Under the pieces are notes generated by a model. It saw nothing but the letters and a program-made list of their open reading frames with translations, ran no database searches and was not told where the DNA came from. A stretch of DNA of 64,000 bases from Mytilus californianus. Lineage: Eukaryota. The stretch is from positions 31,124,001 through 31,188,000 of the forward strand of contig NW_026262668.1 in NCBI RefSeq assembly GCF_021869535.1. The letters run 5' to 3'. Positions 4,713-55,559 of this stretch are shown piece after piece (the stretch's first letter is position 1; every line of letters begins with the position of its first letter). Both the position numbers and the translations under genes were made by a program.

Positions 4713-6794
4713 TTGTATTTTTCTGTTCACACATTAAAAAGTTTTGAAAACTAACGACATCATTAATAAGTATGTTGATGAACGTTTTCAAATGCATATC
4801 CTTATTGTTGTGTTTTTTATCTTTAATACTTGTAAAAACTGGAAAGGTATACATCTTCAAAAATATATATAAAACTTTATAAACTACCCTAAATAATGTC
4901 ATTTATTAACTTAATATTGTATTTTTTATATTATTTTTGTTTGCCCACCGTTTTGTTATGTCCATGTATGTACTGTATTATGATGTTAATGTTATCTTAG
5001 TATGTAAATGTCAAATCATATATGTATGTTCATGTTAAATGTATTGTTATTTCGGTGTAATAATATCACTGTATAAACAAAATTCAAAAACGTTATATTT
5101 GTATTGTTCATGATAATATGGCATGTGCGGCGCAATAAATATTCTTGTCACGATCGAGTAAGCAAATTACTACAAACCTTTAATAGTGGTTACCGATTGT
5201 CTGCCACATGACATTTCTGATTGTAAATATACGAAGTGCTCTAATAATAAATTTGCGGGCAAACGCAAAACTATTTTTAAAATAATATATGAAAAATAAA
5301 AGTACTTTTAGTCAAACAAAACTCATATATGTTACGCCATTAAAAAAAGCAATTTAATTTTAGCGGATTAGGTTTAAAAAATAAATGCAATCGTATATTT
5401 CAACGGTTAAGTAATAGAAATAACGACATCATATGTTTACAAGAAACTCATTCTTGTAGAGAAACAACTGAATAATGGAAAAGGGAATGGAAGTGATGGC
5501 AATAGAACTTGGAACTGCAGTTCAAGTGACTCCCGTGGTATTGCTATATTATTGAAACAAAAATGCAGTTCAATTTTACCGAGTGCCTTCAAGTATTTAA
5601 TGAAGAGATAAAATTATCATTACGATGTATTTATTACCCAAATAGCGAACTCAGAACACGTTTTTTTTTTTAAATCACTTTCATTTGATAATTCCACTGA
5701 AAATGGTATATTCTCGTAATGACATAGGTCACGATGAACTGAAATATTTCATTGATAAAAACAATTTATGTGACGATTGGAGAACCTCAAACCTTGAAGC
5801 TAAAAGGTATACCTTTAATAGGACTAATACGAAATCAAAAATTGATTATATGTTAGTCAGCAAAGATCTTCTTCATAAGATGACAAAGGTAAAAAAGTAC
5901 TCACTTTCCGTTTAGGGACCATGATTTAGTAAGTGCTAAAATAAGTTTGAATGAAATAGAAAGGTGGCCAAGTGTATTGGTTTTGAATGAAAATACTATT
6001 AAGAGTGAAAAATTCAAAAACGCTTTTCTCACAATGTTGGAAGATCGTAAATCTGAAACTGTTCATTACAAAAATAATAAGAAATTGTAGGAGCGTGTTT
6101 AAGCACTATATACGGGCATTATGTATGGAGATATCCGCAAAATTAAATGTAAATGATAAAAAACTACTACAAATGGAATATGACATTGACCATCTCAAAT
6201 CTGACACTGTCAATAACAAATTATCAAAGACTAATGAACTTGAAAAAAAACATTAAAGAAATTTACGAAAAGAAATCTGAAGACGCTTAGATAAGATCTA
6301 AATGTAAATGGTTTGAAAAAGGGGGAAAATCTACGAGATATTTCTTTGAATTAGAAAAATCTAACGGGCAAAGTAAATTATGAAATAGGACACAATGTGA
6401 AGATGGAACATTTTAAAATTGATCTCGATTCTATTCTAGATGAAGAGCCAAAAAATACGAAAAATTATTTAAAAGCGAAGGTTGGGACGAGAAAAAGGGT
6501 AACTGGCTACTACAGTTCGTTGAAAGCACATTAGATGAAAACGAAAACTCAAATTTAGAAAAATAGACTATTAAGAGATTTTGCAAACTGTAGAAAGTCT
6601 TAAAATCTACAAGTCATCTTGTGAAGATGGTATTATAGCCATCTTTTATCAGATATATTGGGATGTTTTAAGGAAAAATTAACTGATTTAGTAAATTCAA
6701 AATTTGAAAGTGGCTCGCTTTGTAAATCACAAATTAGAAGGATGATATCCTTTTACTTTTTAAAGGGGCGAACACAAGAACGTAGAATATTAGA

Positions 6795-35977: not shown

Positions 35978-36484
35978 CTATTTGATTTATTATACTGAAT
36001 GTTCAATCATTATTGTCTTTTACTGTTACATTTTATATTGAAAGTATGTAACTATGACGTCAAGTACACAACAACGTAACAGTTATTAGAAAAACAACAG
36101 AAGTGAAGCAAGACATTTTTTTTTTAATTTGACAGTCTATGAAAAAGTTCTTCTGAGGCCAAAACGTAGACCTTGAGCATTGTCTTTAATTTATTGATGT
36201 TAATTCAATTCATTGTCCTTCAAATTATCGATTTTTGATTGGTCTGCACTAGAGGATGACATTCAAAAAATTGTCTCCCGCTGAGCCATGGGATAGAGTT
36301 AATTATCACCCTCGTATTATTCAACCAAAATCTTGCATTTTGACGTGAAATATAATAAATTTCAATTATCGCACATTAATTTGATATACAATAACCATTG
36401 TGACTGTTAACCGTGTGTAGGTAGTAAAATATTGTAGGCAGAATACATTGCACAAAGGGCATAACACTCTCTTAATTAGTATAG

Positions 36485-36646
36485 AATCGATCCTGCTTAT
36501 AAATATCTCTATGTTTTTCTTTTTGTTTTGATTATATATAATAAATATCTAAGGGAATCATTCAAAATCGATCCTGCTTATAAATTTCTCTATGTTTTTC
36601 TTTTTGTTTTGATTATATATAATAAATATCTAAGGGAATCATTCAA
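36485..36646. repeat. Recent 81-bp tandem duplication
   Basis: Two copies starting at 36485 and 36566, differing at one position that I could see. Confidence 0.9.
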
Positions 36647-36774
36647 ACTTCAATAGTTTAACCCTATTAGGTTGTTTTATGTTCAGATGAGCTTTCAATA
36701 CTTGGCGTACTGAATGAAAAATCTTCTTTGAAACATTTCGCGCTAATTATTTAAATCAATATGATATGCAAAAA

Positions 36775-37105
36775 TATAAAACAAGATGTGTTGGAACAAC
36801 AGGAATGGTCCAGCTGGCAAAAAAGTCGTGAAGCCATTTTTAGGAGTGTAAATTTGAGAATTAAAGTCTGTATAACTGTTCCACAAAATTTTAAAAGTCC
36901 AAAGCCCGTAATTTCAGCAAAGATCAGCAGAGAGGAACCAAACGTGAACTCGATCTGTAACTCATCATAGAAGACTCACATACTAAAAGTCAGCTCAACA
37001 TGTGAAGGCAATTAGAAAACAAGTCCGTATATCTGTTTGTTGTGGAATGACGGAATGACGGATACGGGGAAAACTATATAGCCCTGACACTGTGTGGCGG
37101 GGCCT
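36775..37105 (+). mobile_element. Short Helentron-like non-autonomous element (HINE)
   Basis: ACAAGA start, one satellite-like unit, GGAATGAC microsatellite and a 3' GCCC...GGGC hairpin. Confidence 0.5.
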
Positions 37106-37129
37106 TAGCAATGATAACATACATATATA

Positions 37130-37577
37130 GGTTGCAATTCTGTAAATATAGACAATGCTATTTCCCATAGGAACTCTCTTTGTGGCTAAAACTATGACAC
37201 TTTTACTATGAAGTTTCGTGAAAAATAATATCCCAGAACATAAAGTTTATATGCACTACCATTTAATTCAAAGGTCAAAATATAGGGCTGTGCGGCATAT
37301 TTTCAACATTTATATGCCCTGAACTTCTAGGAGTTTAAACTTATACTAAAATTCTATACTACCCTTACCTTCATATTTTGACCTCCTAAGAATTAAAATT
37401 TAGGCGCTACCATGTTTTTTTATACTGGTTACATTCCCAAGTGATGTCTCTATGAGATGAAACACAGAGATCATAAATGGGAACCAGTACATTAACAAAT
37501 TAACATATCTATGAATATTATATATCTCCCCAAAAGAGGCGTGGTTTGAGAAACAGCTGTATTTACAAAGTGCAACC
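37130..37577. mobile_element. MITE with ~18-bp TIRs and TA flanks (Tc1/mariner-type)
   Basis: TATA|GGTTGCAATTCTGTAAATA ... TATTTACAAAGTGCAACC|TATA. Confidence 0.7.
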
Positions 37578-39218
37578 TATAATCATTACAAAAATCTGAA
37601 GTGAAGCATTCATTGCTCTCATTTACTAGAGAACAATCCTGAAAAAGATGCAATGCAGTATCAGCTATTGCTAATGGAAGGGTGATTTAGTATTTATTTG
37701 TTTATACAACAATTGTCATTCAACCTACTTTTAGACCAAAATTGTATTGTTTGGTCCCTTTATTCATTACGATATCTCTTCATTCAAAAATAACAATCAA
37801 TATTGACTATTTGCAATGGTATAGTTCATATACTAGTATTAACTTTGATAGAGTCGATTATCTGACAGGAATGTTTCTTAAATTTATGTAGAATGAGAAC
37901 ATATTAAATCATATGTAGTCTAACAGATGCAGTAACGTTATGACATGAATATTTGTGGCGTTTAAAAACGGTTTTAAACGTATGGTTTAATAAGTTGATA
38001 AAACGTTTAAGTGCTTGTCTCACTAACAAGGAAAACATCTTCATCTCGAAGACTGTATAGTTATCGGTTGTCGGCAAAAGGGGAATAATTTTATTTTAGA
38101 TTTTTTTGTTACCAGTGACTAAAAGATTCCGGATAGCCATGCTTTTTCGGCCCTAGGTGGTTTATCAATAACATCGAGGACGGACATACAGTTGTGAAAA
38201 GGACTGATTATGAAATTGTAAAAGTAAAGTTAATGAAAATGTATCAATATATATCAATATATATATCACCGAGTTAAGCTTTGCCTATTAAATTCATCTT
38301 TCAAATTGGCACGCATTTACCACAAACATTAGAAAACTATCGTTTTTTTTCCACACAGGATAACTTGCCTTAACAAAGCTTAAACGTTAAAATATTTTTC
38401 CTAATTTGTTTACTTGGATGCCTTCTCTTGCAACAGTTTTATTCGTTAAAACCGAATTTTTTCTGTCTTTAATGTAATGAACATCAAGAGTTGCAACTGG
38501 TACATTATGTCAAGCTCAGGACTTATAAATATGCTTGAGTAAATTTGAGTTGTCTCCCCTAAAGAACAGTTTGTGTGGTTGTAAAATTTTTTGTAAGCTA
38601 TATTTTCATCAGATAACTGTAAAGCTTCTTCAATGTAACTTTATACAGGTATAACGGTCTAATAAATGAACCTGCTCCGAAAAATGCTGTTTATGTTTTA
38701 TTTCATAATCGAAAAGTACGGTTCTCGGTCAAGGTGTTTTCGTAAAATATTCTCGACCAATCGATAACGTCCGATACAATCATGCAATATCATTTATGAA
38801 ATCGTCAACTGTTATAATCTACTCTTGTTCTACCAATATTAATGTATTATCTAACATCATATTCTTCACATCCGGATTTGTAATTCAGCCTCTTGGAAAA
38901 TCTGTTGATGTATTGGCTTACTGTGCAAGACTAAAAGGATTCAAAAAAAAGATCCGAATTAACTAAGCAGACAAAATGACATAACTTGAATAATATTTAT
39001 GTGTAATCAATTATTACATTTTTTACCTAGATATCTGTGTAAATTTAGCGTGGCGAACAAAATTTTAATCCTGGTTTCTATTAAGAATTTTTTTATGAAA
39101 GTATTTGCTCAAAAATGAGTTTATGGTTCTCGACAATTAATACAGGATTCGAATAGACATTTGACATACACTCATTAACAAAGTAAGAACTCATCAAAGA
39201 TACCAGGCGTATAATTGT

Positions 39219-39266
39219 GTACGCCAGGCTTGCGTTTTGTCTACATAAGTCTCATCAGTGACGCCA
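39219..39266 (-). ncRNA. Degenerate minimal hammerhead motif
   Basis: Reverse complement: CGTCA CTGATGA GAC ttatgta GAC AAAAC gcaa GCC TGGCG. GAAA, stem II and the cleavage triplet are mutated. Confidence 0.55.
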
Positions 39267-39641
39267 GATAAGAGTTAAAAGGCCAATTCAAATACGAACT
39301 TGAAGAGCATATAAATACCGAAAATTCCAAAAAGTTGTTCCAAAAAACTTAAAGGCTGAGGCAGAAAAACCTAAGTATTTCGAAAAGTTCAGCATTTTCG
39401 AAACAGTAAATTTATAGAAGATATCAGTTAAAAACGTAGAACACCACGAACAAATGAACAAAATGCGACAAAACGAAAAAAATTTATAAAAAAAATCGCT
39501 TTAACATTATATATAGAGAACTTGTTCCCATCTTAAAAATTATGGCGGATTTATTTTTTGAGTTGAAAATGAAAATGCGGTGGTAAGTTGCACCTGTTCG
39601 CAGCCAACATGTATTGTGTAATTTAGAACCAATGATTATAA

Positions 39642-39977
39642 GTTATATGGTTCGATACTGACCCCTACGGATCCATAGAGGGTTAGTAAAATTCATAGGG
39701 GTGAGACCGAAGGCCGAATCTCCTATGGATTTTACTCACCCTCTATGGTCCGTATAGGGTCAGTAGTGGACCGTATAACGAATTTATTGCACGCGGGATT
39801 TTTCCTGCTGCGTTTTGTAAAACAAAAACAATGAAATACAACAACCCCAATAGATGACGTCACCATTGAAGGTAGACGTGACGTCATGAACCCCCTATGC
39901 AATTTACTAACCCCCTACGGATCCATAGGGGTCACGACGTGACGGCGTTAAACCATAACTTACCCGCGGTGCGATAA
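39642..39977. mobile_element. Palindromic non-autonomous element: 138-bp hairpin with CCGAAGG apex plus a second IR-bounded module
   Basis: Hairpin at 39642-39779. The module 39783-39977 is bounded by TTATTGCACGCGGG / CCCGCGGTGCGATAA and contains a further CCTACGGATCCATAG copy and two TGACGTCA sites. Confidence 0.7.
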
Positions 39978-41994
39978 GCAGTCTTATTCTTGTCCTAAAC
40001 ATATTAGTCGAAAGGAAAAAAAACAGGACCACGACCAACAAACAACAGACCAACACATCACTTTATAAAAAATTAACGGTTGGGCAAAACAACCCCCCCC
40101 CCCCCTCCCCCATAGAAAAAAAAAGAAAACAAACATTGGTTAACAACTCAGTGTTACGGCCAGAAATCACCTTTAAATGATAGCCAACAAAAGACACAAA
40201 TCAATAATAAAATTTAACAAGATTTATTATACACAAGTTAACAAGTAGTATTACACAAATAGAAATGTCAACTTTACTGACAAAATATAAGTCGGATCCT
40301 TTATCTTTTCTATATCCAGAATCCTTCTCGTAACTGTACGGAAATCCAAACAGAATATTACGTCCAATAAGTCACAATCTAGTATGATGTTGTTCGTAAA
40401 TAAAAGTGTTTAACAACTCCAGAGAACTTCTGAGAATCCAATGTCTATAGATATAGGAAGATGTGGTATGAGTGCCAATGAGACAACTCTCCATTCAAGT
40501 TACAATTTATAAAAGTAAACCATTATATGTCTGAAAGTTTAACTTTAGTGTCTGTATATATATACCTAGCAAACATAAAAACATCTTTAAAATGTTTTTA
40601 AAATGTTGTGTCTAATGTCATGAAAATATCACAAAAAACGTGAGAAAAATATTAAATGTATGGTAGAATATATATCGCTAAAACGTTTTCTAATATATTT
40701 TCTAAAAATATTTGCATAATATAATTAAAATGTTGTAAAGAAATATCATGATAATGTGAAAAACAATGGCGTATAAAACATTTTGATAATCTTTTAAACA
40801 ATATTTTCTAGAAATATTTTCTGAACGTTGAAAAACATCATGAACATCAAATAATGTTATAAAAATGTTTTTTGGATGTTTTCTTGCAAATGAGACTGTG
40901 CCTAAAAAATGTTTTCAAAATGTTTTAAGAAGATGTTTTTGGTTGATATCTAGATCATATCAATATAAAAATTTCTGTACTTTTGATTGAGTTTCCTGCT
41001 TTTTTAAATAACAAATCATTAGTTAAATTAATTTATACACAGTGATTAATTCTTTATACAAACAAGAATAAATCAGTTGTTTTGCTAAGCATATGAAATT
41101 CACAATTCAAAGTCTCTAAAAACAAGAAGTATCTACAAATGTTGACGCATCCAAAAATGGCAGACACAACTCATCATGGTCAAGCCGCTTACCAAATATG
41201 AAGTCATTCTGTTCATCAGCGTTACTAATTAAAGTAATGAAAAATTTGAGAACATTCAACATTTTGAAATACAATGTATAAGCAAACAGGAAACAGGTGC
41301 CAGATACAAAAATGTTTACACATCACATTTCATCACTATCAAGCAGCTCATTAAATATGAACTCATCTTTATCAGCAGTTTTGGGAAAAACAGTGATGAA
41401 AATATTTGTTGGACAAAATCCGACAAATATAGGTGGACAGACGACAGACAGTGCAAGAAAGCCCACATTCCAACCACAATGGTATAATGTTTAGTTTTTC
41501 ACTCTCAACTTTTATTACCTATCTTATACACATCATGCATATGTCAACCTGAACATGCATGACATATATGCCATTGGACATTATGCAAACATTATACACA
41601 TTTTTAAGTTCAAGTTACACTGACTAAAACTTGTGTCCTAAATTCAGATTTTTCAATACAACTTCTCTTTCTAAACTAAAACGCTACACTTCTAATAGGG
41701 TTACATCTTAAGTCAATAATCATTGATAATTGGCTGAAGAGATGAGAACAAAACACCATTTTACATCAACTATTTGATTTATTTAAGAATACATTGAAAA
41801 AGTCAATCAATTGTCTTATTCAAAATCACTTGGAATGTCTTGTAGTGTCTTGTATCTTTTTCTTGCTGTGCCATGCTTCTGAAAAACAAATTAATCTTAC
41901 ATTCATATATAAACTTCTTGCACATTCCTTTATTATAGAACGATTCACGTTGCCTGAAGGATATACATCCCCTCCCCTTTAAAGTTTTGAAACA

Positions 41995-42060
41995 AATAAC
42001 GATGATAGTCTGTCGGAAGGGGACAATAAATGGCTGACCGTGTTAAGAGAGAGCAATATG
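41995..42060 (+). repeat. Possible SINE core fragment (Meta/MESC-like)
   Basis: GTCTGTCGGAAGGGGACAATAAATGGCTGACCGTGT resembles invertebrate SINE core domains; recognised from memory only. Confidence 0.3.
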
Positions 42061-43397
42061 CCACGCTGAACTTCATTTAGTTATTAAAAAAAAAAACACA
42101 TAAAATACTTTAGACTAGATATGTGTCCAGTCAAGAGTCTTATTTCATTATACTCGTAGATTGTTGTCTATCATATTTTTTTTCTTTTATTGTTTTGTAT
42201 AAATCAGGCTGTTGTTTTTCTTGTTTTTTTTAGTTTTCATTAAATGCATTGTATCATGTAGGGGCCTTTAAAAGCCCTGCTACATAATGTCATTAAACAT
42301 CTTATTGTCCTTTTTAAGTGTTAAACTCTGTAGAGTGACATAGTTTATAACTTGTCATTTGTATCTAAGGGCATATGATACAGTCCTAGTAGTATACTAT
42401 AGGCACATAATAACTTATCGAAGTGTTACGCATTGTTTTCGCAATGATGATAATAATATAACTTAACTTCCGAGAAACACACAGATGTCATTAAATGAGT
42501 TGTTTATATGTATTTGAAATACTTCAAAGGAAAGCAAATATGTTGTTTATGTAAGCACACTGTTGAACTAAAAGATTGATTCAAATAAACAACTTGTTTC
42601 TATTTTGTCACAAAAAAAATAATTTATTCAAATTTCCAGATATCTTTTCTGTATTGTATGCCCTCAATCTTGAATGTAATGCATTGTTTATGCTAAATAT
42701 TTGAATTAAATTTGGAATAACAGTAATTCTGTATAAAAATCTTACTTCAAAAAAAAATTCTCCTGAAAGGTTGTAGACATTCCAAAGAACCTGCATATTG
42801 AAGTTGTCTTTTGTGGCTTTTCTTTTAGCCCCTGTTGAAAAAATAAAAGATACATTGTATGTACATTGTGTGTATGAAGCAATAAATATAATTTTAAGCA
42901 ACAGTTTATATTATCTTGCTTGTACTGAAGTCTTACATAGTCTTTGTAATGTTCATAAAGCTGTTAAGGGAAATTTAATTTACTGTTTTGTAAATACATA
43001 CTCATACACTGATTTTACTAGAAAAAAAATATCCATATTCAAATGGTGCTTATATTAGTGTTATTGTAACTTGTTTGTGTGCCTCGGAGACAAGGTAATG
43101 AGTCATGCTTATTGCAATAGTTGTTGGTTTAAGTCTGTCAAATTTCTTTTTCATAATGTGTATTTACTGTAGGCAGTTAGTTGTTTTGTTTCAATCGTGT
43201 TGAGACAAATTTAACATTTGTTTGTCAAGGCTTCAAAGTGGACTATATGTTATTGGTTTTCTCAGTTTTGAAAGCCGTACAGCGACCTATAATTTCTTTT
43301 ATCCAAGTCATTTAAATTTTGGTGGATAGCTGTCTCATACACCTTATTTCGAAATCTGTCCCGCTTGAACTTTTTACGTCAGCATACGTCATACAAT

Positions 43398-43690
43398 AAT
43401 ACACCTTATCGCTATTCCCGCTTGACCCGAGAATCTATCCTGCTTGAACTTTTGACGTCAAACAACAATCACTTTTCCATTGTGGCATCAGATATTTTTT
43501 ATGATGACATCAAAATTTTAAGGGAACTTGTGACAGTTGTGTGATGTCCAGTAATGGCGGACAAATAGCAATAAGGTGTATTACTTTCAATTGTGGTGTC
43601 AAATATTTTCTAATATGACGTCAACATTTTACAGGAACTTTTGTAATGTCCATGGCCAGTAATGGCGGACAAATAGCGATAAGGTGTATT
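43398..43690. mobile_element. Small TIR element with a duplicated right end
   Basis: Left AATACACCTTATCGCTATT (43398); right AATAGC(A/G)ATAAGGTGTATT at 43564-43582 and again at 43672-43690. Confidence 0.65.
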
Positions 43691-45599
43691 GGCAATCAAA
43701 CACATAAGCCACATATCCTTATAATTTTTTTATATCAATGAACAAATTCATAATTGGTGTACGTAGATGCTTGAACAGTGGTGGATTTAGGGGCCCCGAC
43801 CCCCTTATGGAGCTACTTATAAGATAAATGCATAGACTATTTACAAGTATCACTCCAAACGTTTGCTTGCCTTGGGCAGGGCCCCCTTTTTTCAAAACCT
43901 TGATCCGCACCTCCAGAAACAGATGTAATTTGGTTCCGATTATGATTGAACACACACAATGAATGCACAAGTTTCATCTTAACAGATTATAGTAATCATT
44001 CTTACCAAGTGAGTATATATCGCGTAACAAACAATTTTCTTGGCTCTCTTTGTTGATATCCTGTCTTCGTTTCGAAATTCAAATTTCAAAATCATTTCCG
44101 GTGATAAAACAAAAGTCGATTCCGGAAAAGGTCGGTTTTCCGTAAGGCATATAAACGATACGAAAATTGAACTTAGTACAGTTACAGTTTTCATTTCTTA
44201 ATTTCTAAAATATACACGAACGAAATGAATAAACATTAAAGAAAGGTGATTGTTTATTAATACATTATTGCTTAATTTAATGTTGACTCTTTTGAATATT
44301 AATATAAGAAGGAATAAAATTTGACTTCAAGGATCTTCAAGATATCAATTAAGGATTTCAACCATAGTATCTTGCTTGTCATGATATTGATGAAATGTAG
44401 TACTATATCTTATCCTGAAAAGAACGAGCTAATTCCACAAATCGTTGTTTGTGGGGTTTTGAATCAAGTTTAAATAAAATGTTATTTTTATATCCGTAAA
44501 ATGTTGAATAAAATATCAGTAAGACTATTAAGTAATGTGTATGTCAGAATATTTTATAGAAAACATTTAGCTGATATTTTTATTTTATTTAGATTCAAAT
44601 TGAGATAGCTTTGCTTATAATCTCTAATTGCGAGATATAAGCTGTAGTGAATTTCTTTGGTGTAATATAGTTAATAATCAATCTCCTTTTTTAGAAGTTT
44701 TTTTTACCGATTGCGAAAAAAATCTTCTCAGAGATGATACCTATAAGTGTGTCTATTTGGTATCTTTTAATTATACATTGATCTCGTTTTTAGAAGTTTT
44801 TTTCTATTTCGAAAAAAATCCTCTCAGAGATGATGTCTATAAGCAATAATCTTATTTCTTTGAAATTTGCTACATCGGTCTCGTTTTTTAGAAGTTTTTT
44901 TCTATTTCGAAAAAAATCCTCTCAGAGATGATGTCTATATGCAATAATCTTGTTTCTTTGAAATTTGCTAAGCACTTACGAGTACGCTAACATTGCGCGG
45001 GATAAGAACGTGTATATACGTGTTGGCTTGTGATTGGTTCGTGAAATATATTCATAAATTGTTGTAGAGCAAAGGAGAAAGTTGATTGGTTAATGAAAAA
45101 GCATCATATGTTGAACAGAACTACGTCACACAGCGTATGACCTAACCTCTCAAATACTGAAATATTTCGTCATGTAATGTAATTTCCAAATATCTTAAAT
45201 TATATCTAATAAAGATGCAAGCATAGTAGTATTTTATATAATTTAATGCAATAATATGAATTAGTAACAGTAATATTACATGTGAATATAAATATATCAG
45301 CTCTTAAAGAATCTCACATCTGCGTACTAGTTGGTAAAAATTAACAAATTGTCCGAGACGGACATAATCTTGAAACTTTATAGTCTTTATAAAAATAAAA
45401 TAGAATGTAATACTAGTATCATTACCTGCTGAGTTAAACTAATTATGAATTCCAGATATTTTAGTACCAGCTGTGTCCATAAATTAATCCAGTTTTCATA
45501 AATATTATATATAATTATGTCGTAATGTTCCCTGAATTTTAATTTTGAGCACTTTGAGCACTGAGTATTGTTGTGTAAGTGTAATAATATGCAGTGTAG

Positions 45600-46418
45600 T
45601 TAATATTCGAAGTGGCGACGTCTTCCTCTGAACGATCCTCTGTTGTTTCTGCTGTTTCTATTGTCTCTCATACTGTTTTTTAACTCATCCATTTCCCTTC
45701 TGAGTTTTGCAAGTTCTGTTTCTTCTTCCCTCTGGGATTTCCTTTTTATCTGACCAACTTCATTTTTTAACTTCTGTACATCTCCTCCTCTCTCGTTTTT
45801 GATTTCCTCTTTACTAATTGGTTTTAGCGCTGCCTCTCTATATTTTTCTGCCCACTTTTCTTTGACTTCTTGCACTTGATTATTCAGTTTAGTAATATTT
45901 TTTCCGTTTTTGATTTTTGTACAGGCTTCCCTCCATATCTGTTCGCTATTAGTTTGCATTTTTTCCGAATGCTCCGTGGCTGCTTGTAACATTGTTTCCC
46001 GGAAACTTGTTCTAATGTTTTTATTGAGATCCTGAATTTTGCCTCAAAAGAAAAGTTCAGTGTCACTAGATCCTAGCTGTGGATTAAATGATGCCTTTTG
46101 TATCCTGGCATAGTCTGGTAATTCATCTCCTTTAAAACGTCTAAGGTCCCTTGTCAAGGTGGCGGTGTTGTGTCTCCTCGATAGCATTCCGTTAATGTTT
46201 CTAATACAGTTATTTATTTCTTGACTGTCATTGTCGTTCTCAAATTCTTCATCAAGATTCCCAAGATTGAAGTTGATTAGTATTATCTGGGGTAGAGTTA
46301 TTCTTTGTCCCGATGGTATCTCGTCATTCATGTTCCCTAATTCCAGGTCGGACTCTGTGTTTGACATGTTGTTCTGGTTACTAGGTTTTTTCTTTAGAGT
46401 CAGTTTGCTTCTATCCAT
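45600..46418 (-). pseudogene. Coiled-coil ORF of copy A with one premature stop
   Basis: Colinear with 50431-51249 except for a few substitutions, including CGA>TGA at 46044-46046. Confidence 0.85.
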
Positions 46419-47452
46419 GTGAATTCAGTAGAGTATTCTGTCAGATATAGTCACTGTCTAGGCGTATTTGTATTGCATCAAAGGTTTCCGCTGCATTGTT
46501 TTAGCACAAAGGACATTTCCTAAATGGTTTTACAGATTCCCATCAATGTTGTACCCATCAATAAATCTACATTTGATACGTTTTTGCGGTAGGTATATAG
46601 AACTTTGCAAGTGTGCTTTTATGGCTCAAATTATAAATTGACCATTTAATAATGTGATTTTAATTCCATAATTACTTGTATTCTTTCCGTCTCCGAGGTC
46701 TGCATTAAATATGCGAATCGACGTTATATTTAAAAAAAAACCAAACCATATTTTTTATAGATTGCTTTTTAAATAGAATTATTTTAACTTCAATTTTCAT
46801 CTGTAATGTAGTATTTAGGATATTATTTCAGTTCATATCACATCCCATTGTTCAATAATGCTGATTATCAGTATAATAGAGACAATGCATTAATAAGTCT
46901 ACTAGGAGATTACCAAGATTCACAAAATCAAGGCAATACGGAGGTTGGACAACGTGTGAAGCAGAGACTTCGAACATACAATTTATAAATAGCCGTGTCC
47001 ATTACCAATCCCAGCAAAACATTTGTCAATAGGTGAAATATATCGATTTCTGTATAGACTTTTCTAAAGTTATGCTGCGTATACTATACATTTATTTTGT
47101 GGTTATTTCTATCGTAGCCTGATTTGACCTTTTATAAATAGCCGTGTCCATTACCAATCCCAGCAACACATATTAACACCTTTGTCAATAGGTGAATTAT
47201 ATATCGATATCTGTACAGACTTTTCTAAAGAAGTTATGCTGCATATATATTTATTTTGTGGTTATTTCTATCGTAGCCTGATTTGACCTTTCTTATGTAA
47301 AATAATTACTGTTAGAAAGGTGTGTGTCTGTGAGAAGATTATCTGGTTTTACTCATTTGCATATAGGCAATGGTTATTCATCTGTAATGATGTGTGGTAA
47401 TTAAGTAGAAGTCTTCGATTTTCAATGATTTAAAAATGATTAAGCTGCACCT

Positions 47453-47610
47453 GGTGTTTCGGATATCATTTAGGTCATTTTTGACCAAGGCCGTAAATCT
47501 TCATCAGGTACCCTAGCCTTGTATAATTATAATTACTATGTAATTACAATTCGATTAGTTCTTGCTGTGGTAACATATCAAATGTAGTAGTATTTTTAGG
47601 GCACGACACC
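47453..47610 (-). ncRNA. Type III hammerhead ribozyme, copy A
   Basis: Same fold as 54405-54562, but the first stem II pair is A-C instead of G-C. Confidence 0.75.
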
Positions 47611-47682
47611 TGGTGAATCTGCAATATCATTATTATTTTTGTGTCCTTTCTTATCTAATTACTATTTAATTGTTTACAGTGA

Positions 47683-49653
47683 TTATAATTTTGCCGAGGT
47701 CAAGTACTCCTTCACGTTCTTATGTTTACCATAAGCAATCATAGGTGGTCTGGGAAATAAATTCTTAGCAATTATATCATTTTCAATTAAATGCCAATGT
47801 TTTCTTATTCGTCTTCCCAATTGTTTAAAGAGTGGATTGAATTTAGTTGCTAGTACTAGTGGTGGACAGTTTTGTTTATTTCTTTTTTTATAACATAATG
47901 TATTCTGTCTGTTTTTTCTCAGTGTTTTATCTATCAACGGATTAATTTCAGTTTCCAAGTATCCTCTTAGTGTAAGTTTTTGTTTGAATACTTCTATCTG
48001 TGTGTCGAGGTCATCTCTGTTACAACACGATCTAATGAACCTTGTAATTTCACCAATTATAAATCCTTTGAATACAGATGCTGGGTGAGCAGACGATTTT
48101 TCTAAGTATTGGTAATTATCTGTAGGTTTGCGATATAATTTGACATCTAATATCTTTTCTGTTTCAAATCGGGTTCCTTTAAATATTGTTACATCCAAAA
48201 ACTGTATTTGATTATTAGAGATTTCATGAGTAAATTTTAATAGTGGGTGAATACTATTTGCAATTTGGTAAAATTCCTTAAGAGATTGTTCGCTTCCTTT
48301 AAATAATAAGAATCCGTCATCTCTGTAGACAGAAAGAAGAGAAATGTCCGACGAGTATGGAAAGCGTTTCAATATTTCAGAAACGATTTCGTATATTCTT
48401 ATATCTGTTAAACTAGGCGACATTGGGGATACCATTGGAACCCCAATTTTCTGTTTGAAAATTTGCCCGTTGAATTCAAATTCATTATTTGCAAGGGCAA
48501 TTTTAAGTAATTCCAGTAAAGCCTTTTTGGGTGGCACTGGGATGTCAAATTTACACTGCATTATTAGTGGCCATGCTCTGTCAATTGCATTAATAATTTC
48601 AGTATGATGTAGATTGGTGTACATACTTGAAATGTCAAATGAGCTCATTAATATGTCCGCAGGTGCTCTTATTTTTTCCAATTTGTTTATGAAGGAAGTT
48701 GTATCTTGTGTGTATGTCCAAAATTTATTGACAACTGGTTTAATAAAATAATCGATCTATTGTGCAATTTTTTCCAATGGGCTATTACATAAGGATACGA
48801 TCGGTCTTCCTGGAACGTTTACATTCTGTAAATGATTGATATCAGTTTTAATCTTTTGTTTATCCGATTGATTAATTTTATGAAGTTTTGGTAGGAAGTA
48901 TAGTCTCCCTAATCTATTTCCCTGGTCATTTATTAAAAACTTAAATGTAACTTCATCAATGTAGGATTCATTGTGTAGACGATGAATAATAGTGTTGATA
49001 CTTTCTAGTATTTCCGTTGTATGAGATTCGTTAATTCTTTCATAGTGTACATTGTCATTTAATTGGTCTTTTGCCATTTTTATATATAGCTCTTTATCAA
49101 GAACAACTGTTGAGGAGTTTTTATCTGCCTTTTTGATAATGATACGATCATTTGAACGTAGTGATTGTAATGCTTTTCTTTCATTTTTAGGCAGGTTGTC
49201 CTTAAATGATTTAATTTGTATTTTTTCCAATTCAATTCTTGTCGAAAATAAGTAATTTTTAATTGCATTATTAGCCCAGTTTGGCTTATAACCACTTTTG
49301 GAAAGAAATGGATGACGATTGTATTGGTGAGATCCATCATCAAAATGATATTTGCATCTCATTTTACGGGCTAGTTCATTGAAGTCATTTATGAGAGTTT
49401 TCTTAGCGTTTCGAAGATTTGGACTAGGAATGAATTTAAGTCCTTTCGCTAGAACTAGAATTTCAGCATTACATAACTTTTCTTTTGTGAATATATCAAC
49501 ATATTTTGCAGCTCTCTGTACTTTTTCCGTGTGTTTATATTGTCGTCTCTTATGTTGTCGGTTTATATTGTATATTTTCCTTTTTTCTTTATTTTTAGTA
49601 ATTTTGCGTTTCTTATCACTAGCTTTGAACGATCTATTCTTTCTATTAGACAT
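47683..49653 (-). pseudogene. PLE reverse transcriptase (656 codons) with one in-frame TAG, no GIY-YIG
   Basis: LAKGLKFIP, KKADK, LPKLHK, GRPIVS, SFDISSMYT, VYRDDGF. TAT>TAG at 48757-48759; the two track ORFs are in the same frame. Confidence 0.9.
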
Positions 49654-50430
49654 GATTGGATGATTAGTCTTCCTTGTGTGCTTCTTCTTATATATATAAT
49701 AATTTACGTCTTTGAGTTTGAATTGATATGCTTAGTTCAGATTCAAATTGAGATAGCTTTGCTTATAATCTCTAATTGCGAGATATAAGCTGAAGTGAAT
49801 TTCTTTGGTGTAATATAGTTAATAATCAATCTACTTTTTTAGAAGTTTTTTTTAGGCTATTTATAAATTGTATGTTCGAAGTCTCTGCTTCACACGTTGT
49901 CCAACCTCCGTATTGCCTTGATTTTGTGAATCTTGGTAATCTCCTAGTAGACTTATTAATGCATTGTCTCTATTATACTGATAATCAGCATTATTGAACA
50001 ATGGGATGTGATATGAACTGAAATAATATCCTAAATACTACATTACAGATGAAAATTGAAGTTAAAATAATTCTATTTAAAAAGCAATCTATAAAAAATA
50101 TGGTTTGGTTTTTTTTTAAATATAACGTCGATTCGCATATTTAATGCAGACCTCGGAGACGGAAAGAATACAAGTAATTATGGAATTAAAATCACATTAT
50201 TAAATGGTCAATTTATAATTTGAGCCATAAAAGCACACTTTCAAAGTTCGGTATACCTACCGCAAAAACGTATCAAATGTAGATTTATTGATGGGTACAA
50301 CATTGATGGGAATCTGTAAAACCATTTAGGAAATGTCCTTTGTGCTAAAACAATGCAGCGGAAACCTTTGATGCAATACAAATACGCCTAGACAGTGACT
50401 ATATCTGACAGAATACTCTACTGAATTCAC

Positions 50431-51249
50431 ATGGATAAAAGCAAACTGACTCTAAAGAAAAAACCTAGTAACCAGAACAACATGTCAAACACAGAGTCCG
50501 ACCTGGAATTAGGGAACATGAATGACGAGATACCATCGGGACAAAGAATAACTCTACCCCAGTTAATACCAATCAACTTCAATCTTGGGAATCTTGATGA
50601 AGAATTTGAGAACGACAATGACAGTCAAGAAATAAATAACTGTATTAGAAACATTAACGAAATGCTATCGAGGAAACACTACACCGCCACCTTGACAAGG
50701 GACCTTAGACGTTTTAAAGGAGATGAATTACCAGACTATGCCAGGATACAAAAGGCATCATTTAATCCACAGCTAGGATCTAGTGACACTGAACTTTTCT
50801 TTCGAGGCAAAATTCAGGATTTCAATAAAAACATTAGAACAAGTTTCCGGGAAACAATGTTACAAGCAGCCACGGAGCATTCGGAAAAAATGCAAACTAA
50901 TAGCGAACAGATATGGAGGGATGCCTGTACAAAAATCAAAAACGGAAAAAATATTACTAAACTGAATAATCAAGTGCAAGAAGTCAAAGAAAAGTGGGCA
51001 GAAAAATATAGAGAGGCAGCGCTAAAACCGATTAGTAAAGAGGAAATCAAAAACGAGAGAGGAGGAGATGTACAGAAGTTAAAAAATGAAGTTGGTCAGA
51101 TAAAAAGGAAATCCCAGAGGGAAGAAGAAACAGAACTTGCAAAACTCAGAAGGGAAATGGATGAGTTAAAAAACAGTATGAGAGACAATAGAAACAGCAG
51201 AAACAACAGAGGATCGTTCAGAGGAAGACGTCGCCACTTCGAATATTAA
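50431..51249 (+). CDS. 272-aa coiled-coil protein with Arg-rich C-terminus (PLE accessory ORF), intact
   Basis: Uninterrupted ORF with charged heptad-like segments (KLNNQVQEVKEKW...LAKLRREMDELKNSM) and tail RNNRGSFRGRRRHFEY; conserved in copy A. Confidence 0.75.
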   Translation: MDKSKLTLKKKPSNQNNMSNTESDLELGNMNDEIPSGQRITLPQLIPINFNLGNLDEEFENDNDSQEINNCIRNINEMLSRKHYTATLTRDLRRFKGDELPDYARIQKASFNPQLGSSDTELFFRGKIQDFNKNIRTSFRETMLQAATEHSEKMQTNSEQIWRDACTKIKNGKNITKLNNQVQEVKEKWAEKYREAALKPISKEEIKNERGGDVQKLKNEVGQIKRKSQREEETELAKLRREMDELKNSMRDNRNSRNNRGSFRGRRRHFEY

Positions 51250-51892
51250 CTACACTGCATATTATTACACTTACACAACAATACTCAGTGCTCAAAGTGC
51301 TCAAAATTAAAATTCAGGGAACATTACGACATAATTATATATAATATTTATGATAGCGATATATTTATAAAAACTGGATTAATTTATGGACACAGCTGGT
51401 ACTAAAATATCTGGAATTCATAATTAGTTTAACTCAGCAGGTAATGATACTAGTATTACATTCTATTTTATTTTTATCAAGACTATAAAGTTTCAAGATT
51501 ATGTCCGTCTCGGACAATTTGTTAATTTTTACCAACTAGTACGCAGATGTGAGATTCTTTAAGAGCTGATATATTTATATTCACATGTAATATTACTGTT
51601 ACTTATTCATATTATTGCATTAAATTATATAAAATACTACTATGCTTGCATCTTTATTAGATATAATTTAAGATATTTGGAAATTACATTACATGACGAA
51701 TAATTTCAGTATTTGAGAGGTTAGGTCATACGCTGTGTGACGTAGTTCTGTTCAACATATGATGCTTTTTCATTAACCAATCAACTTTCTCCTTTGCTCT
51801 ACAACAATTCATGAATATATTTCACGAACCAATCACAAGCCAACACGTATATACACGTTCTTATCCCGCGCAATGTTAGCGTACTCTTAAGT

Positions 51893-52180
51893 GCTTAGCA
51901 AATTTCAAAGAAACAAGATTATTGCATATAGACATCATCTCTGAGAGGATTTTTTTCGAAATAGAAAAAAACTTCTAAAAAACGAGACCGATGTAGCAAA
52001 TTTCAAAGAAATAAGATTATTGCTTATAGACATCATCTCTGAGAGGATTTTTTTCGAAATAGAAAAAAACTTCTAAAAACGAGATCAATGTATAATTAAA
52101 AGATACCAAATAGACACATTTATAGGTATCATCTCTGAGAAGATTTTTTTCGCAATCGGTAAAAAAAACTTCTAAAAAAG
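51893..52180 (+). repeat. About three ~97-bp tandem units upstream of the RT (mirrored at ~44690-44975)
   Basis: Repeated CATCTCTGAGA(G/A)GATTTTTTTCG(A/C)AAT...AAAAAAACTTCTAAAAA. Confidence 0.85.
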
Positions 52181-52360
52181 GAGATTGATTATTAACTATA
52201 TTACACCAAAGAAATTCACTACAGCTTATATCTCGCAATTAGAGATTATAAGCAAAGCTATCTCAATTTGAATCTGAACTAAGCATATCAATTCAAACTC
52301 AAAGACGTAAATTATTATATATATAAGAAGAAGCACACAAAGAAGACTAATCATCCAATC

Positions 52361-54332
52361 ATGTCTACTAGAAAGAATAGATCGTTCAAAGCTAGGGATA
52401 AGAAACGCAAAATTGCTAAAAATAAAGAAAAAAGGAAAATATACAATATAAACCGACAACATAAGAGACGACAATATAAACACACGGAAAAAGTACAGAG
52501 AGCTGCAAAATATGTTGATATATTCACAAAAGAAAAGTTATGTAATGCTGAAATTCTAGTTCTAGCGAAAGGACTTAAATTCATTCCTAGTCCAAATCTT
52601 CGAAACGCTAAGAAAACTCTCATAAATGACTTCAATGAACTAGCCCGTAAAATGAGATGCAAATATCATTTTGATGATGGATCTCACCAACACAATCGTC
52701 ATCCATTTCTTTCCAAAAGTGGTTATAAGCCAAACTGGGCTAATAATGCAATTGAAAATTACTTATTTTCGACAAGAATTGAATTGGAAAAAATACAAAT
52801 TAAATCATTTAAGGACAACCTGCCTAAAAATGAAAGAAAAGCATTACAATCACTACGTTCAAATGATCGTATCATTATCAAAAAGGCAGATAAAAACTCC
52901 TCAACAGTTGTTCTTGATAAAGAGCTATATATAAAAATGGCAAAAGACCAATTAAATGACAATGTACACTATGAAAGAATTAACGAATCTCATACAACGG
53001 AAATACTAGAAAGTATCAACACTATTATTCATCGTCTACACAATGAATCCTACATTGATGAAGTTACATTTAAGTTTTTAATAAATGACCAGGGAAATAG
53101 ATTAGGGAGACTATACTTCCTACCAAACCTTCATAAAATTAATCAATCGGATAAACAAAAGATTAAAACTGATATCAATCATTTACAGAATGTAAACGTC
53201 CCAGGAAGACCGATCGTATCCTTATGTAATAGCAACATTGGAAAAAATTGCACAATATATCGATTATTTTATTAAACCAGAGGTCAATAAATTTTGGACA
53301 TACACACAAGATACAACTTCCTTCATAAACAAATTGGAAAAAATAAGTGCACCTGCGGACATATTAATGAGCTCATTTGACATTTCAAGTATGTACACCA
53401 ATCTACATCATACTGAAATTATTAATGCAATTGACAGAGCATGGCCACTAATAATACAGTGTAAATTTGACATCCCAGTGCCACCCAAAAAGGCTTTACT
53501 GGAATTACTTAAAATTGCCCTTGCAAATAATGAATTTGAATTCAACGGGCAAATTTTCAAACAGGAAATTGGGGTTCCAATGGGATCCCCAATGTCGCCT
53601 AGTTTAACAGATATAAGAATATACGAAATCGTTTCTGAAATATTGAAACGCTTTCCATACTCGTCGGACATTTCTCTTCTTTCTGTCTACAGAGATGACG
53701 GATTCTTATTATTTAAAGGAAGCGAACAATCTCTTAAGGAATTTTACCAAATTGCAAATAGTATTCACCCACTATTAAAATTTACTCATGAAATCTCTAA
53801 TAATCAAATACAGTTTTTGGATGTAACAATATTTAAAGGAACCCGATTTGAAACAGAAAAGATATTAGATGTCAAATTATATCGCAAACCTACAGATAAT
53901 TACCAATACTTAGAAAAATCGTCTGCTCACCCAGCATCTGTATTCAAAGGATTTATAATTGGTGAAATTACAAGGTTCATTAGATCGTGTTGTAACAGAG
54001 ATGACCTCGACACACAGATAGAAGTATTCAAACAAAAACTTACACTAAGAGGATACTTGGAAACTGAAATTAATCCGTTGATAGATAAAACACTGAGAAA
54101 AAACAGACAGAATACATTATGTTATAAAAAAAGAAATAAACAAAACTGTCCACCACAAGTACTAGCAACTGAATTCAATCCACTCTTTAAACAATTGGGA
54201 AGACGAATAAGAAAACATTGGCATTTAATTGAAAATGATATAATTGCTAAGAATTTATTTCCCAGACCACCTATGATTGCTTATCGTAAACATAAGAACG
54301 TGAAGGAGTACTTGATCTCGGCAAAATTATAA
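52361..54332 (+). pseudogene. PLE reverse transcriptase of copy B with one +1 frameshift (~53230), no GIY-YIG
   Basis: AGCAACATTGG versus AGCCCATTGG in copy A. Motifs SFDISSMYT, GVPMGSPMSP and YRDD are present. The ORF ends PPMIAYRKHKNVKEYLISAKL* at the same position in both copies. Confidence 0.9.
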
Positions 54333-54404
54333 TCACTGTAAACAATTAAATAGTAATTAGATAAGAAAGGACACAAAAATAATAATGATATTGCAGATTC
54401 ACCA

Positions 54405-54562
54405 GGTGTCGTGCCCTAAAAATACTACTACATTTGATATGTTACCACAGTAAGAACTAATCGAATTGTAATTACATAGTAATTATAATTATACAAGGCT
54501 AGGGTACCTGATGAGGATTTACGGCCTTGGTAAAAAATGACCTAAATGATATCCGAAACACC
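54405..54562 (+). ncRNA. Type III hammerhead ribozyme, copy B (core intact)
   Basis: GGTGTC (cleavage after 54410); stem I GTGCCCTA/TAGGGTAC enclosing 81 nt; CTGATGA at 54508-54514; stem II GGAT/ATCC; GAAA at 54555-54558; stem III GGTGT/ACACC. Confidence 0.85.
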
Positions 54563-54725
54563 AGGTGCAGCTTAATCATTTTTAAATCATTGAAAATCGA
54601 AGACTTCTACTTAATTACCACACATCATTACAGATGAATAACCATTGCCTATATGCAAATGAGTAAAACCAGATAATCTTCTCACAGACACACACCTTTC
54701 TAACAGTAATTATTTTACATAAGAA

Positions 54726-55043
54726 AGGTCAAATCAGGCTACGATAGAAATAACCACAAAATAAATATATACGCAGCATAACTTCTTTAGAAAAGTCTGT
54801 ACAGATATCGATATATAATTCACCTATTGACAAAGGTGTTAATATGTGTTGCTGGGATTGGTAATGGACACGGCTATTTATAAAAGATCAAATCAGGCTA
54901 CGAAAGAAATAACCACAAAATAAATGTATAGTATACGCAGCATAACTTTAGAAAAGTCTATACAGAAATCGATATATTTCACCTATTGACAAAGGTTTTA
55001 ATATGTTTTGCTGGGATTGGTAATGGACACGGCTATTTATAAA
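54726..55043 (+). repeat. Two ~158-bp direct repeats downstream of the ribozyme (mirrored at ~46985-47290)
   Basis: TCAAATCAGGCTACGA...GGACACGGCTATTTATAAA occurs twice (TCA at 54729 and 54888). Confidence 0.9.
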
Positions 55044-55559
55044 AAGTAAACTCCTAGAAAACTTAGGAACGGAAGCTTCTAGAATACGATAGAAGTTTGA
55101 ATTACACATCGTAGATTATGATCATTCCAGAATTATTATGTAAGTCAAAAAAAGAAAGTTCTAATCATTTCATCAGTCTCTATGATTGTTCCAGTGATTT
55201 CTAAACTACACAGTTACAATATTTTATTTTGTAAACAACTATAAGGCCATACAAAACAAATTAGGCCAATATAAATAAATATAATAATTACAATATCATA
55301 ACATCAGGTATGCATTGAAAGTAACAACTGCATACCTCATCACACAATTACGTTAAAAAAAGGTAAAATACAAATTTGCCTGATAACCCCTACTTTTCTT
55401 TTCTTAATTTTATAACAAATAGTTTAAAAAAAACATATTTGAAAATCTAAGTTAATCCTTGTTATTTTTCATAGTTTTTGAAAGAAAAAAGGTGCCATTA
55501 GACTAAATTTGAACACAGATTGTTCTGAAGGATAATAGTTCCGGTCATACTAGGAGAAC

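What the first reader, a model, noticed from the sequence alone, without database searches (positions are those of the whole stretch)
44591..55043. Two different circular permutations of one ~5.15-kb retroelement, joined back to back
Seen: copy B (+) runs leader-CC ORF-spacer-RT-ribozyme-repeats and starts and ends with the same 13 nt. Copy A (-) runs RT-ribozyme-repeats-leader-CC ORF-spacer, reads straight through the end-to-start junction (at ~46985, GGACACGGCTATTTATAAA|TTGTATGTTCG) and has ~115 bp of terminal redundancy. Each is one unit long (5148 and 5176 bp between redundant ends) but opened ~2.3 kb apart on the map. They meet 5'-to-5' at 49854/49855 and I see no TSD. Known: PLEs form partial tandems and inverted 5' segments, and hammerhead retrozymes replicate through circular RNA. 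Inference: the template was a circular or multimeric RNA. One ribozyme per unit could release monomers for ligation, making this a protein-coding, RT-encoding circular-RNA retroelement with no endonuclease.
Basis: partly seen in the sequence, partly recalled or inferred. Interest (0 to 1): 0.88.

Follow-up and report, generated by a model that had tools for sequence, protein, structure and literature searches.

The report
Penelope-like retroelement pair, head to head
Two decaying copies of a mussel Penelope-like jumping gene that lacks its own DNA-cutting enzyme lie head to head. Their permuted look is the normal architecture of this element class, so it does not show that the element copies itself from a circular RNA.

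Summary
Copy B (+, 49855-55043) is one unit that starts and ends with the same 13 nt. Copy A (-, 49854-44591) is [unit 2306-5189][unit 14-2421], reads through the end/start junction and has a 116-nt terminal redundancy. The two meet 5'-to-5' at 49854/49855.

The element is a Mytilus Penelope-like element (PLE): a helical ORF1, a 656-aa RT without GIY-YIG, and a real hammerhead ribozyme.

- Sixteen distinct junctions in the genome end at exactly the same 3' base.
- Head-to-head pairs and partial tandems are the family norm.
- DNA tandem arrays exist (C87, C121, and a 16-kb array in a relative).
- A's 3' end is unique in the assembly.

Many copies start exactly at the predicted ribozyme cut. They are joined to 3' ends of other RNAs, once to a different subfamily. 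That fits template jumps between linear RNAs.

A conserved 150-nt block spans the junction, which fits internal initiation on more-than-unit RNA, the published PLE model.

A circular template for PLE tandems was already proposed in 2014 and remains untested here, because no RNA reads mapped. What may be new is the ribozyme-defined 5' ends, the permuted hammerhead, and an interstitial EN-less PLE.

The parts
44591..49854 (-). Copy A: partial tandem [q2306-5189][q14-2421], 5264 bp
   Evidence: 98.4-98.6% identical to B
46982..49854 (-). Copy A, upstream 5'-truncated unit (q2306-5189). It holds RT remnants 47683-49653 with a TAT>TAG nonsense change.
44591..46981 (-). Copy A, downstream unit (q14-2421) with broken ORF1 (45600-46418). 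Its 3' end at q2421-2424 is unique in the genome.
46870..47021 (-). Block of about 150 nt spanning the end/start junction (junction at 46982-46994). It is about 90% conserved between subfamilies whose flanks cannot be aligned. Candidate RT binding and internal initiation region.
44591..44706 (-). Terminal redundancy of A, 3' copy (q2306-2421)
49739..49854 (-). Terminal redundancy of A, 5' copy. A's 5' end at q2306 is shared to within 1 nt with locus L002 (C121:49857774).
47448..47615 (-). Hammerhead of copy A (cut between 47605 and 47604). It carries a G>A change at the first helix II pair.
49855..55043 (+). Copy B: full unit q1-5189. Its first 13 nt are the last 13 nt of an upstream unit.
50431..51249 (+). 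ORF1, 272 aa, predicted long helices with a basic RG-rich tail. No Pfam family.
51896..52180 (+). Three tandem repeats of about 98 bp just upstream of the recurrent 5' end q2306 (52160). Possible internal promoter region (inferred).
52361..54332 (+). RT gene, split in B by a 1-nt insertion near 53235. Intact as 656 aa in other copies. No GIY-YIG domain.
54400..54567 (+). Hammerhead ribozyme with helix III open (type III topology), a loop 1 of about 85 nt and a long helix II. Cut GUC|G at 54410/54411 (q4556/4557).
54724..55043 (+). Two 159-bp tandem repeats ending in the fixed 3' terminus ...GGCTATTTATAAA
41588..44581 (+). Left flank: 3' end of an abundant, 5'-truncating repeat (over 200 copies, 94-99% identical). 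It lies tail to tail with A, 9 nt away.
55048..55303 (.). Right flank: an abundant repeat of about 256 bp that begins 4 nt after B's 3' end

Best explanation
This is a complex but typical insertion of an endonuclease-less Penelope-like element (PLE) of Mytilus.

Unit order: leader, ORF1 (helical, RG-rich tail), spacer with 98-bp repeats, RT (656 aa, GIY-YIG deleted), hammerhead, 159-bp repeats.

The 'end' and 'start' of the unit are not free ends. They are the two sides of an RT initiation site that lies inside a conserved 150-nt block of a more-than-unit RNA transcribed from tandem copies.

- Copy B is a cDNA started at that canonical site and copied for one unit plus 13 nt.
- Copy A is a cDNA of a read-through RNA. 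It was started at a non-canonical place (q2421, with 2 nt of microhomology to a T-rich DNA end) and copied back across the junction to an RNA 5' end at q2306.
- The two cDNAs, primed from the two sides of one break, were joined 5'-to-5'.

Elsewhere in the genome, RNAs cut by the hammerhead serve as linear templates, and the RT jumps from their 5' ends to the initiation site of further RNAs. This builds tandem runs.

Shown: the anatomy, the fixed 3' end, the ribozyme-site 5' ends, the DNA tandem arrays, the conserved junction block, and purifying selection on the RT.

Inferred: two-sided priming in a single event, internal initiation, a transcription start at q2306, and how an element without an endonuclease gets its DNA break.
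For: PLE identity:
- The RT has a RVT_1 domain.
- It is 34% identical over 534 aa to RT-GIY-YIG proteins. The GIY-YIG segment (residues 578-660 of P0079) is missing, while the C-terminal motif may be retained, though that second alignment piece is weak (E = 1.5).
- RT dN/dS is 0.14 between the two subfamilies, with the same stop codon.

Fixed 3' end: 16 different junctions end at ...GGCTATTTATAAA.

Copy gradient: DNA depth in another individual rises from 11-35 (5' half) to 145-367 (hammerhead to end).

Head-to-head pairs occur at roughly half of the 15 or so young-family loci mapped, for example L001, L003, L005, L008, L017, L027, L036, L044.

Tandem arrays: C87 with at least 2 full units at period 5185, and C121. 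A related element fills a 16-kb contig with 4.4 units.

Hammerhead:
- One descriptor hit in the unit and 0 in 300 shuffles.
- The older subfamily keeps the core and changes only the free position 7, uses a GUA triplet, and turns a G.U pair into G-C in helix I, while loop 1 and the flanks diverge.
- Four relatives carry a hammerhead core 25-48 nt after the RT stop.

Linear cut templates: copies start exactly at G4557, next to flank DNA, to 3' ends (with no filler, or with TT, the first two leader bases), or to a different subfamily's unit.

The junction lies within a conserved block.

Literature:
- PMC8557442: partial tandems plus an inverted 5'-truncated copy are typical of PLEs.
- PMC11167929: a PLE protein extends both strands, initiates inside the RNA, and uses multi-copy mRNA.
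Against: - A's 3' end at q2421 has no second example, so its origin is a single-case inference. A later deletion cannot be excluded.
- Both copies are close to one unit long (unit + 13 nt and unit + 116 nt). Random 5' truncation of long linear templates does not predict this, but a circle would.
- No RNA evidence was obtained.
- Whether the two arms arose in one event is unknown. No empty site was found.
- No TSD is seen here. One other locus (L001) has a possible 6-9-bp TSD, so the source of the DNA break is unclear.
Confidence: 0.72

Rival explanations
1. Circular template. Hammerhead-cut unit-length RNA is ligated into a 5.2-kb circle. Reverse transcription starts at different points and stops shortly after one round, which gives two different permutations, each with a short terminal redundancy.
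For: - Both copies are one unit plus a short overlap.
- There is one hammerhead per unit, and tandem arrays could supply two cuts.
- Mussels accumulate small hammerhead circRNAs, so the ligation machinery exists (PMC7229834).
- The idea was proposed for PLEs in 2014 (PMC4209133).
Against: - Only one permuted copy was found among the dozen or so young copies spanning that region. All others share the 3' end q5189.
- A's 5' end is shared with an unpermuted copy, L002, which points to an RNA 5' end and not to a stop after one lap.
- Cut 5' ends are captured as free ends and joined to other RNAs, including another subfamily.
- DNA tandem arrays explain read-through junctions without circles.
- No copy ends at q4556.
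Confidence: 0.1
2. Copy A is a full-length cDNA of a terminally redundant transcript of a tandem array. Transcription starts at q2306, behind the 98-bp repeats, and ends at q2421 one unit later. The RT was primed from the RNA's true 3' end instead of the internal site.
For: - The 5' end at q2305/2306 recurs in two independent insertions that share 6 private substitutions, so they come from the same source lineage.
- A TATA-like TTTATAGG lies about 40 nt upstream.
- Priming from the template's 3' end is a minor product of a PLE RT in vitro (PMC11167929).
Against: - No canonical poly(A) signal lies before q2421, and there is no A tail.
- The 3' end is seen only once.
- No RNA data.
Confidence: 0.25
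3. Two separate insertions, or a later DNA rearrangement. One copy landed at the edge of the other, or A lost its 3' part (q2422-5189) by deletion when or after the neighbouring repeat arrived.
For: - A's 3' end lies 9 nt from the 3' end of a young abundant repeat.
- Other loci also show internal ends and nested copies, such as q1395 in L005 and q3053 in C121.
- PLE proteins nick AT-rich DNA, including their own sequence (PMC11167929).
Against: - The missing part of A is nowhere in the 64-kb window.
- Head-to-head joints are too frequent in the family to be chance neighbours.
- A and B belong to one source lineage and have similar private divergence, 8 and 11 changes in 1.7 kb.
Confidence: 0.2
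4. Assembly artefact: a false inverted join of repeat copies.
For: PLE inverted and tandem structures are known to confuse assemblies (PMC8557442).
Against: - The arms differ at 1-1.5% of sites, are offset by 2.3 kb on the unit, and carry different inactivating mutations.
- The same architecture recurs at many loci.
Confidence: 0.03

Closest known systems
Canonical EN+ Penelope-like elements (Penelope/Poseidon, e.g. PAc of Anolis; PMC11167929, PMC8557442)
   Same: - RT homologous over most of its length.
- Partial tandems (pseudo-LTRs) and an inverted 5'-truncated partner.
- Strong 5' truncation with a fixed 3' end.
- A hammerhead in the repeated terminal region.
- Signs of internal initiation on more-than-unit RNA, including a short 'tail' (TT).
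   Different: - No GIY-YIG endonuclease.
- A separate ORF1.
- The hammerhead has helix III open and a loop 1 of about 85 nt, not the minimal type I form.
- Genomic copies begin exactly at the ribozyme cut. For PAc, no reads beginning or ending at the cut were found.
EN-deficient PLEs Athena and Coprina (Gladyshev and Arkhipova 2007, as cited in PMC8557442)
   Same: No endonuclease, an ORF1 of coiled-coil type in Athena, and a hammerhead near the 3' end.
   Different: - Those elements sit at chromosome ends and carry reverse-complement telomeric repeats.
- This copy is 31 Mb inside a contig of at least 126 Mb and has no such repeats.
- This RT looks like an EN+ PLE that lost the GIY-YIG segment.
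- No phylogeny against Athena or Coprina was made.
Animal non-LTR retrozymes (PMC7229834; bioRxiv 10.64898/2026.07.22.740005)
   Same: Tandem repeats bounded by hammerheads. The hammerhead-to-3'-end piece of this element (about 633 bp) forms such tandem runs (C87, C24, C1).
   Different: - Retrozymes are non-coding, 170-400 nt, and shown to be circular RNAs.
- Here the unit is 5.2 kb and coding, and no circle is shown.
- The run junctions are 3' end joined to cut site, and not a re-sealed cut site.
LINE-1 twin priming and endonuclease-independent L1 insertion (from general knowledge)
   Same: Inverted 5'-joined arms from priming on both sides of a break, non-canonical 3' ends, and no TSD.
   Different: In twin priming the two arms are non-overlapping parts of one RNA. 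Here they overlap by 2.4 kb and one arm crosses a unit junction.

Membership tests
Penelope-like elements | RT of the PLE type (homologous to RT fused to GIY-YIG) | tested here: met
   The protein has a RVT_1 domain. It is 34% identical over 534 aa to P0079, which carries RVT_1 and GIY-YIG. More distant hits in the search also carry PF01541.
Penelope-like elements | Partial tandems forming pseudo-LTRs, strong 5' truncation, fixed 3' end | tested here: met
   Every full-length copy is preceded by a partial unit (13 nt up to more than 3 kb). Sixteen junctions end at q5189.
Penelope-like elements | Inverted 5'-truncated copy adjacent at the 5' end | tested here: met
   Seen in the window and at roughly half of the 15 or so young-family loci mapped.
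Penelope-like elements | Hammerhead motif in the repeated terminal region | tested here: met
   The motif, its conservation and the genomic 5' ends at the cut site were checked. Cleavage was not assayed. Rfam models miss the motif.
Penelope-like elements | GIY-YIG endonuclease (canonical EN+ clades only) | tested here: not met
   No PF01541 domain. The ORF ends at the same stop codon in both subfamilies, and the hammerhead follows 78 nt later.
Athena/Coprina (EN- PLEs) | Telomeric location and reverse-complement telomeric repeats at the 3' end | tested here: not met
   The copy is interstitial (C88 at 31 Mb, with matches on C88 up to 126 Mb). The only CCCTAA is part of helix I and is absent from the older subfamily.
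Athena/Coprina (EN- PLEs) | Phylogenetic placement of the RT within those clades | not tested
   No named Athena or Coprina sequences were on hand.
Retrozymes | Non-autonomous, non-coding unit | tested here: not met
   The unit encodes ORF1 and an RT under purifying selection.
Retrozymes | Circular RNA intermediate | not testable with these tools
   Two RNA runs gave 0 reads on the stretch. No RNase R data.

The most novel reading that the evidence does not exclude
The family really does pass through unit-length, hammerhead-processed and ligated 5.2-kb RNA circles. That would make it an autonomous, protein-coding counterpart of retrozymes. The two 'one unit plus a little' copies would be single laps begun at different points.
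Probability: 0.1. Interest if true: 0.75.

Novelty: new variant of a known kind. Interest (0 to 1): 0.36.

Why it matters
The flagged architecture is ordinary for Penelope-like elements, so it should not be counted as evidence for a new circular-RNA retroelement.

The family is still useful for three reasons:
- Its genomic copies record, base for base, RNA 5' ends made by a hammerhead. They also record RT jumps from those ends to an internal start site. This is natural evidence that ribozyme-cut RNA is used as a template. The one biochemical study of a PLE did not see this.
- The hammerhead-to-end runs show how retrozyme-like tandem repeats can bud from an autonomous element.
- The family is an endonuclease-less PLE that spreads inside chromosomes, which raises the question of where its DNA breaks come from.

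Tried and rejected
- Rfam found no hammerhead or any other family at gathering scores over the whole window, or at E up to 10 around the ribozyme and the junction. The long loop 1 probably defeats the models. A second, HDV-like ribozyme in the leader therefore has no support.
- RNA reads: two raw RNA runs (4-6% of each was read) gave 0 reads. This is no test of expression, ends or circles.
- Homology of older relatives seemed to stop at q2444, which suggested a true 3' end near A's. It is only a divergent gap, and the RT follows.
- If the left-flank repeat had been inserted into A, the rest of A should lie nearby. It is not in the window.
- Empty-site search in the assembly found none.
They were mapped from loci already held and from pattern hits.
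- Telomeric-repeat idea: rejected.
- ORF1 of a relative is not detectably homologous (E = 0.85), although both end in an RG-rich tail.
- The ORF1 model is of low confidence (pLDDT 48), so 'coiled coil' remains only plausible.
Natural intact copies were used instead.
Full report
**Coordinates.** I number the unit by copy B: q = window position minus 49854.

**Observation.** Repeat finding and BLAST show four inverted arms of 98.4-99% identity. They resolve into two copies:
- Copy B (+, 49855-55043) = q1-5189.
- Copy A (-, 49854 down to 44591) = [q2306-5189][q14-2421].

- B begins and ends with GGCTATTTATAAA.
- A carries this 13-mer once and reads straight through it.
- A's two ends repeat 116 nt with 2 mismatches.
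- The copies abut 5'-to-5' at 49854/49855 without filler.
- No TSD is visible.

An assembly artefact is unlikely. The arms differ at 1-1.5% of sites and carry different inactivating mutations. B has a 1-nt insertion near 53235. A has a TAT>TAG change 24 nt further on.

**What the element is.**
- The genome is a 1.65-Gb Mytilus assembly. The best protein hit is 93% identical to M. edulis.
- Other copies hold an intact 656-aa RT (L001) with a RVT_1 domain.
- It is 34% identical over 534 aa to proteins that carry RVT_1 plus GIY-YIG, the canonical PLE architecture.
- In those proteins the GIY-YIG domain lies between the RT and a C-terminal motif. Our protein may retain that motif, though this second alignment piece is weak (E = 1.5). 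Here the GIY-YIG segment is simply absent.
- Dozens of relatives of about 645 aa in mussels, oysters and pearl oysters also lack it.
- Between the young subfamily and one that is 82% identical, RT dN/dS is 0.14 with the same stop codon. The endonuclease-less protein is therefore the working form.
- ORF1 (272 aa) has no Pfam family. It is predicted, at low confidence, as long helices with an RG-rich basic tail. Its synonymous sites are saturated between subfamilies while the RT's are not.

**The ribozyme.** At 54400-54567 the sequence forms a hammerhead with helix III open:
- Order: helix III strand, GUC cut at 54410/54411, helix I with a loop of about 85 nt, CUGAUGA, a long helix II, GAAA, helix III strand.
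- A descriptor finds this one site in the unit and nothing in 300 dinucleotide shuffles.
- The 82% subfamily keeps every core base except position 7, the one free position. It uses GUA and turns a G.U pair into G-C in helix I, while loop 1 and the downstream flank are unalignable.
- Four relatives from other bivalves have a hammerhead core 25-48 nt after the RT stop. In two of them it is plainly of type I. The mussel form therefore looks like a permutation.
- Rfam misses it.

3' ends:
- Sixteen different junctions end at exactly ...GGCTATTTATAAA.
- They are followed by unrelated DNA, by the unit start, or by a ribozyme-cut 5' end.
- A's 3' end at q2421-2424 occurs nowhere else.

5' ends are scattered (q538, 961, 1679, 2045, 2055, 2619, 3013, 3027 ...), with two hot spots.

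First hot spot, q4557, the first base after the predicted cut:
- Of 36 sites with GTGCCCTAAAAATAC..., 17 keep the upstream ribozyme strand.
- The rest begin there. They lie next to flank DNA (C1:66139903), directly after a 3' end (C87, twice), or after a 3' end plus TT (C24, the C1 array, and contigs of another individual).
- TT is the first two bases of the leader. The acceptor RNA therefore ran past the '3' end'.
- In L002 a young unit is joined to the cut 5' end of the older subfamily. This is a jump between different RNAs and not a lap round a circle.

Second hot spot, q2305/2306:
- It is shared by A and by L002.
- Together with B, these two share six private substitutions.

**Architecture elsewhere.**
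- Head-to-head joints occur at roughly half of the 15 or so young-family loci mapped.
- Every full-length copy has a partial unit upstream, from 13 nt to more than 3 kb.
- C87 holds [q2055-5189] plus at least two full units at a 5185-bp period, head to head with a run of hammerhead-to-end pieces. C121 is similarly complex.
- A related element fills a 16-kb contig with 4.4 units of RT plus a 226-aa ORF.
- DNA depth in another individual rises about tenfold from the 5' half to the hammerhead-to-end part.

**The junction.** About 150 nt spanning the end/start junction stay about 90% identical between subfamilies whose neighbouring sequence cannot be aligned. The 'ends' are therefore the two sides of one conserved element.

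**Reading.** These features match what is published for PLEs:
- Partial tandems, and often an inverted 5'-truncated copy at the 5' end (PMC8557442).
- A purified PLE protein that cuts and extends both DNA strands, starts cDNA at an internal site of the RNA, and is thought to use multi-copy mRNA (PMC11167929).

On this reading, B is a standard copy with a 13-nt upstream remnant. A is a cDNA of a read-through RNA that began at an unusual place and ran to an RNA 5' end at q2306. At A's start the DNA end ...TTTTATTT offers 2 nt of microhomology.

The flanks are the 3' end of an abundant 5'-truncating repeat (ending at 44581) and a 256-bp repeat starting at 55048. The target was a repeat-rich, AT-rich spot.

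**The circle idea.**
- It is not excluded.
- Both copies being close to one unit long is its best argument.
- Mussels do make abundant small hammerhead circles (PMC7229834).
- But it was already proposed for PLEs in 2014 (PMC4209133).
- RNA evidence could not be had, because two RNA runs gave no reads.

**Limits.**
- The large arrays could not be fetched.
- The counts are lower bounds.
- One event versus two, and the source of the DNA break, remain open.
I used natural intact copies.

**Earlier scan notes.** Notes on this same window (s1-318123, s1-318180) already flagged the type III hammerhead and the endonuclease-less PLE. My checks agree with both.

Noticed in passing
G000 C1:71835025-71852530 (pattern hits only): A higher-order tandem array with a period of about 2921 bp. 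Each period holds two ribozyme-cut-site starts 511 bp apart, and the second of each pair is joined as TATAAA+TT+GTGCCC. It looks like a satellite growing out of the element's hammerhead-to-end piece.
   Followed up: partly
L064 (ENA ERZ26168041 ctg178735, 16011 bp): The whole contig is a head-to-tail array of 4.4 units (RT 642 aa plus a 226-aa ORF, period 3622 bp) of a related endonuclease-less PLE. The contig name ends in _c, which may be an assembler's 'circular' flag. The length is not a whole number of units.
   Followed up: partly
window 54400-54567 versus L059:2259-2400 and L062:5986-6130: The hammerhead is permuted in the mussel family (helix III open, helix I closed by a long loop). 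Oyster and metagenome relatives have type I forms with a closed 5-bp helix III.
   Followed up: partly
window 41588-44581: A very abundant young repeat (5111 candidates, 94-99% identical) with a fixed right end and variable left ends. It is a 5'-truncating retroelement whose 3' end lies 9 nt from copy A. No ORF of 120 aa or more lies in 36000-44600.
   Followed up: partly
window 55048-55303: A repeat of about 256 bp with over 1500 candidate copies at 85-91% identity, possibly a SINE. It starts 4 nt after copy B.
   Followed up: no
L001:1486-1500 and 4834-4845 (C68:3.636 Mb): A head-to-head pair with both 3' ends canonical is flanked by ACTGTGAAA on one side and TACTGTGTAA on the other. This is a possible TSD of 6-9 bp, which would imply a staggered break for an element without an endonuclease.
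   Followed up: partly
window 50431-51249 versus L048:1747-2586: ORF1 is far more diverged between subfamilies (63% aa identity, synonymous sites saturated) than the RT (85% aa identity, dS 0.62). The two halves of the unit may have different histories, which would suggest recombination by template switching.
   Followed up: partly
window 54567 (contigs of runs X1 and X15): Contigs switch from the young to the older subfamily sequence exactly at the 3' edge of helix III. These are chimeras at the ribozyme boundary.
   Followed up: no
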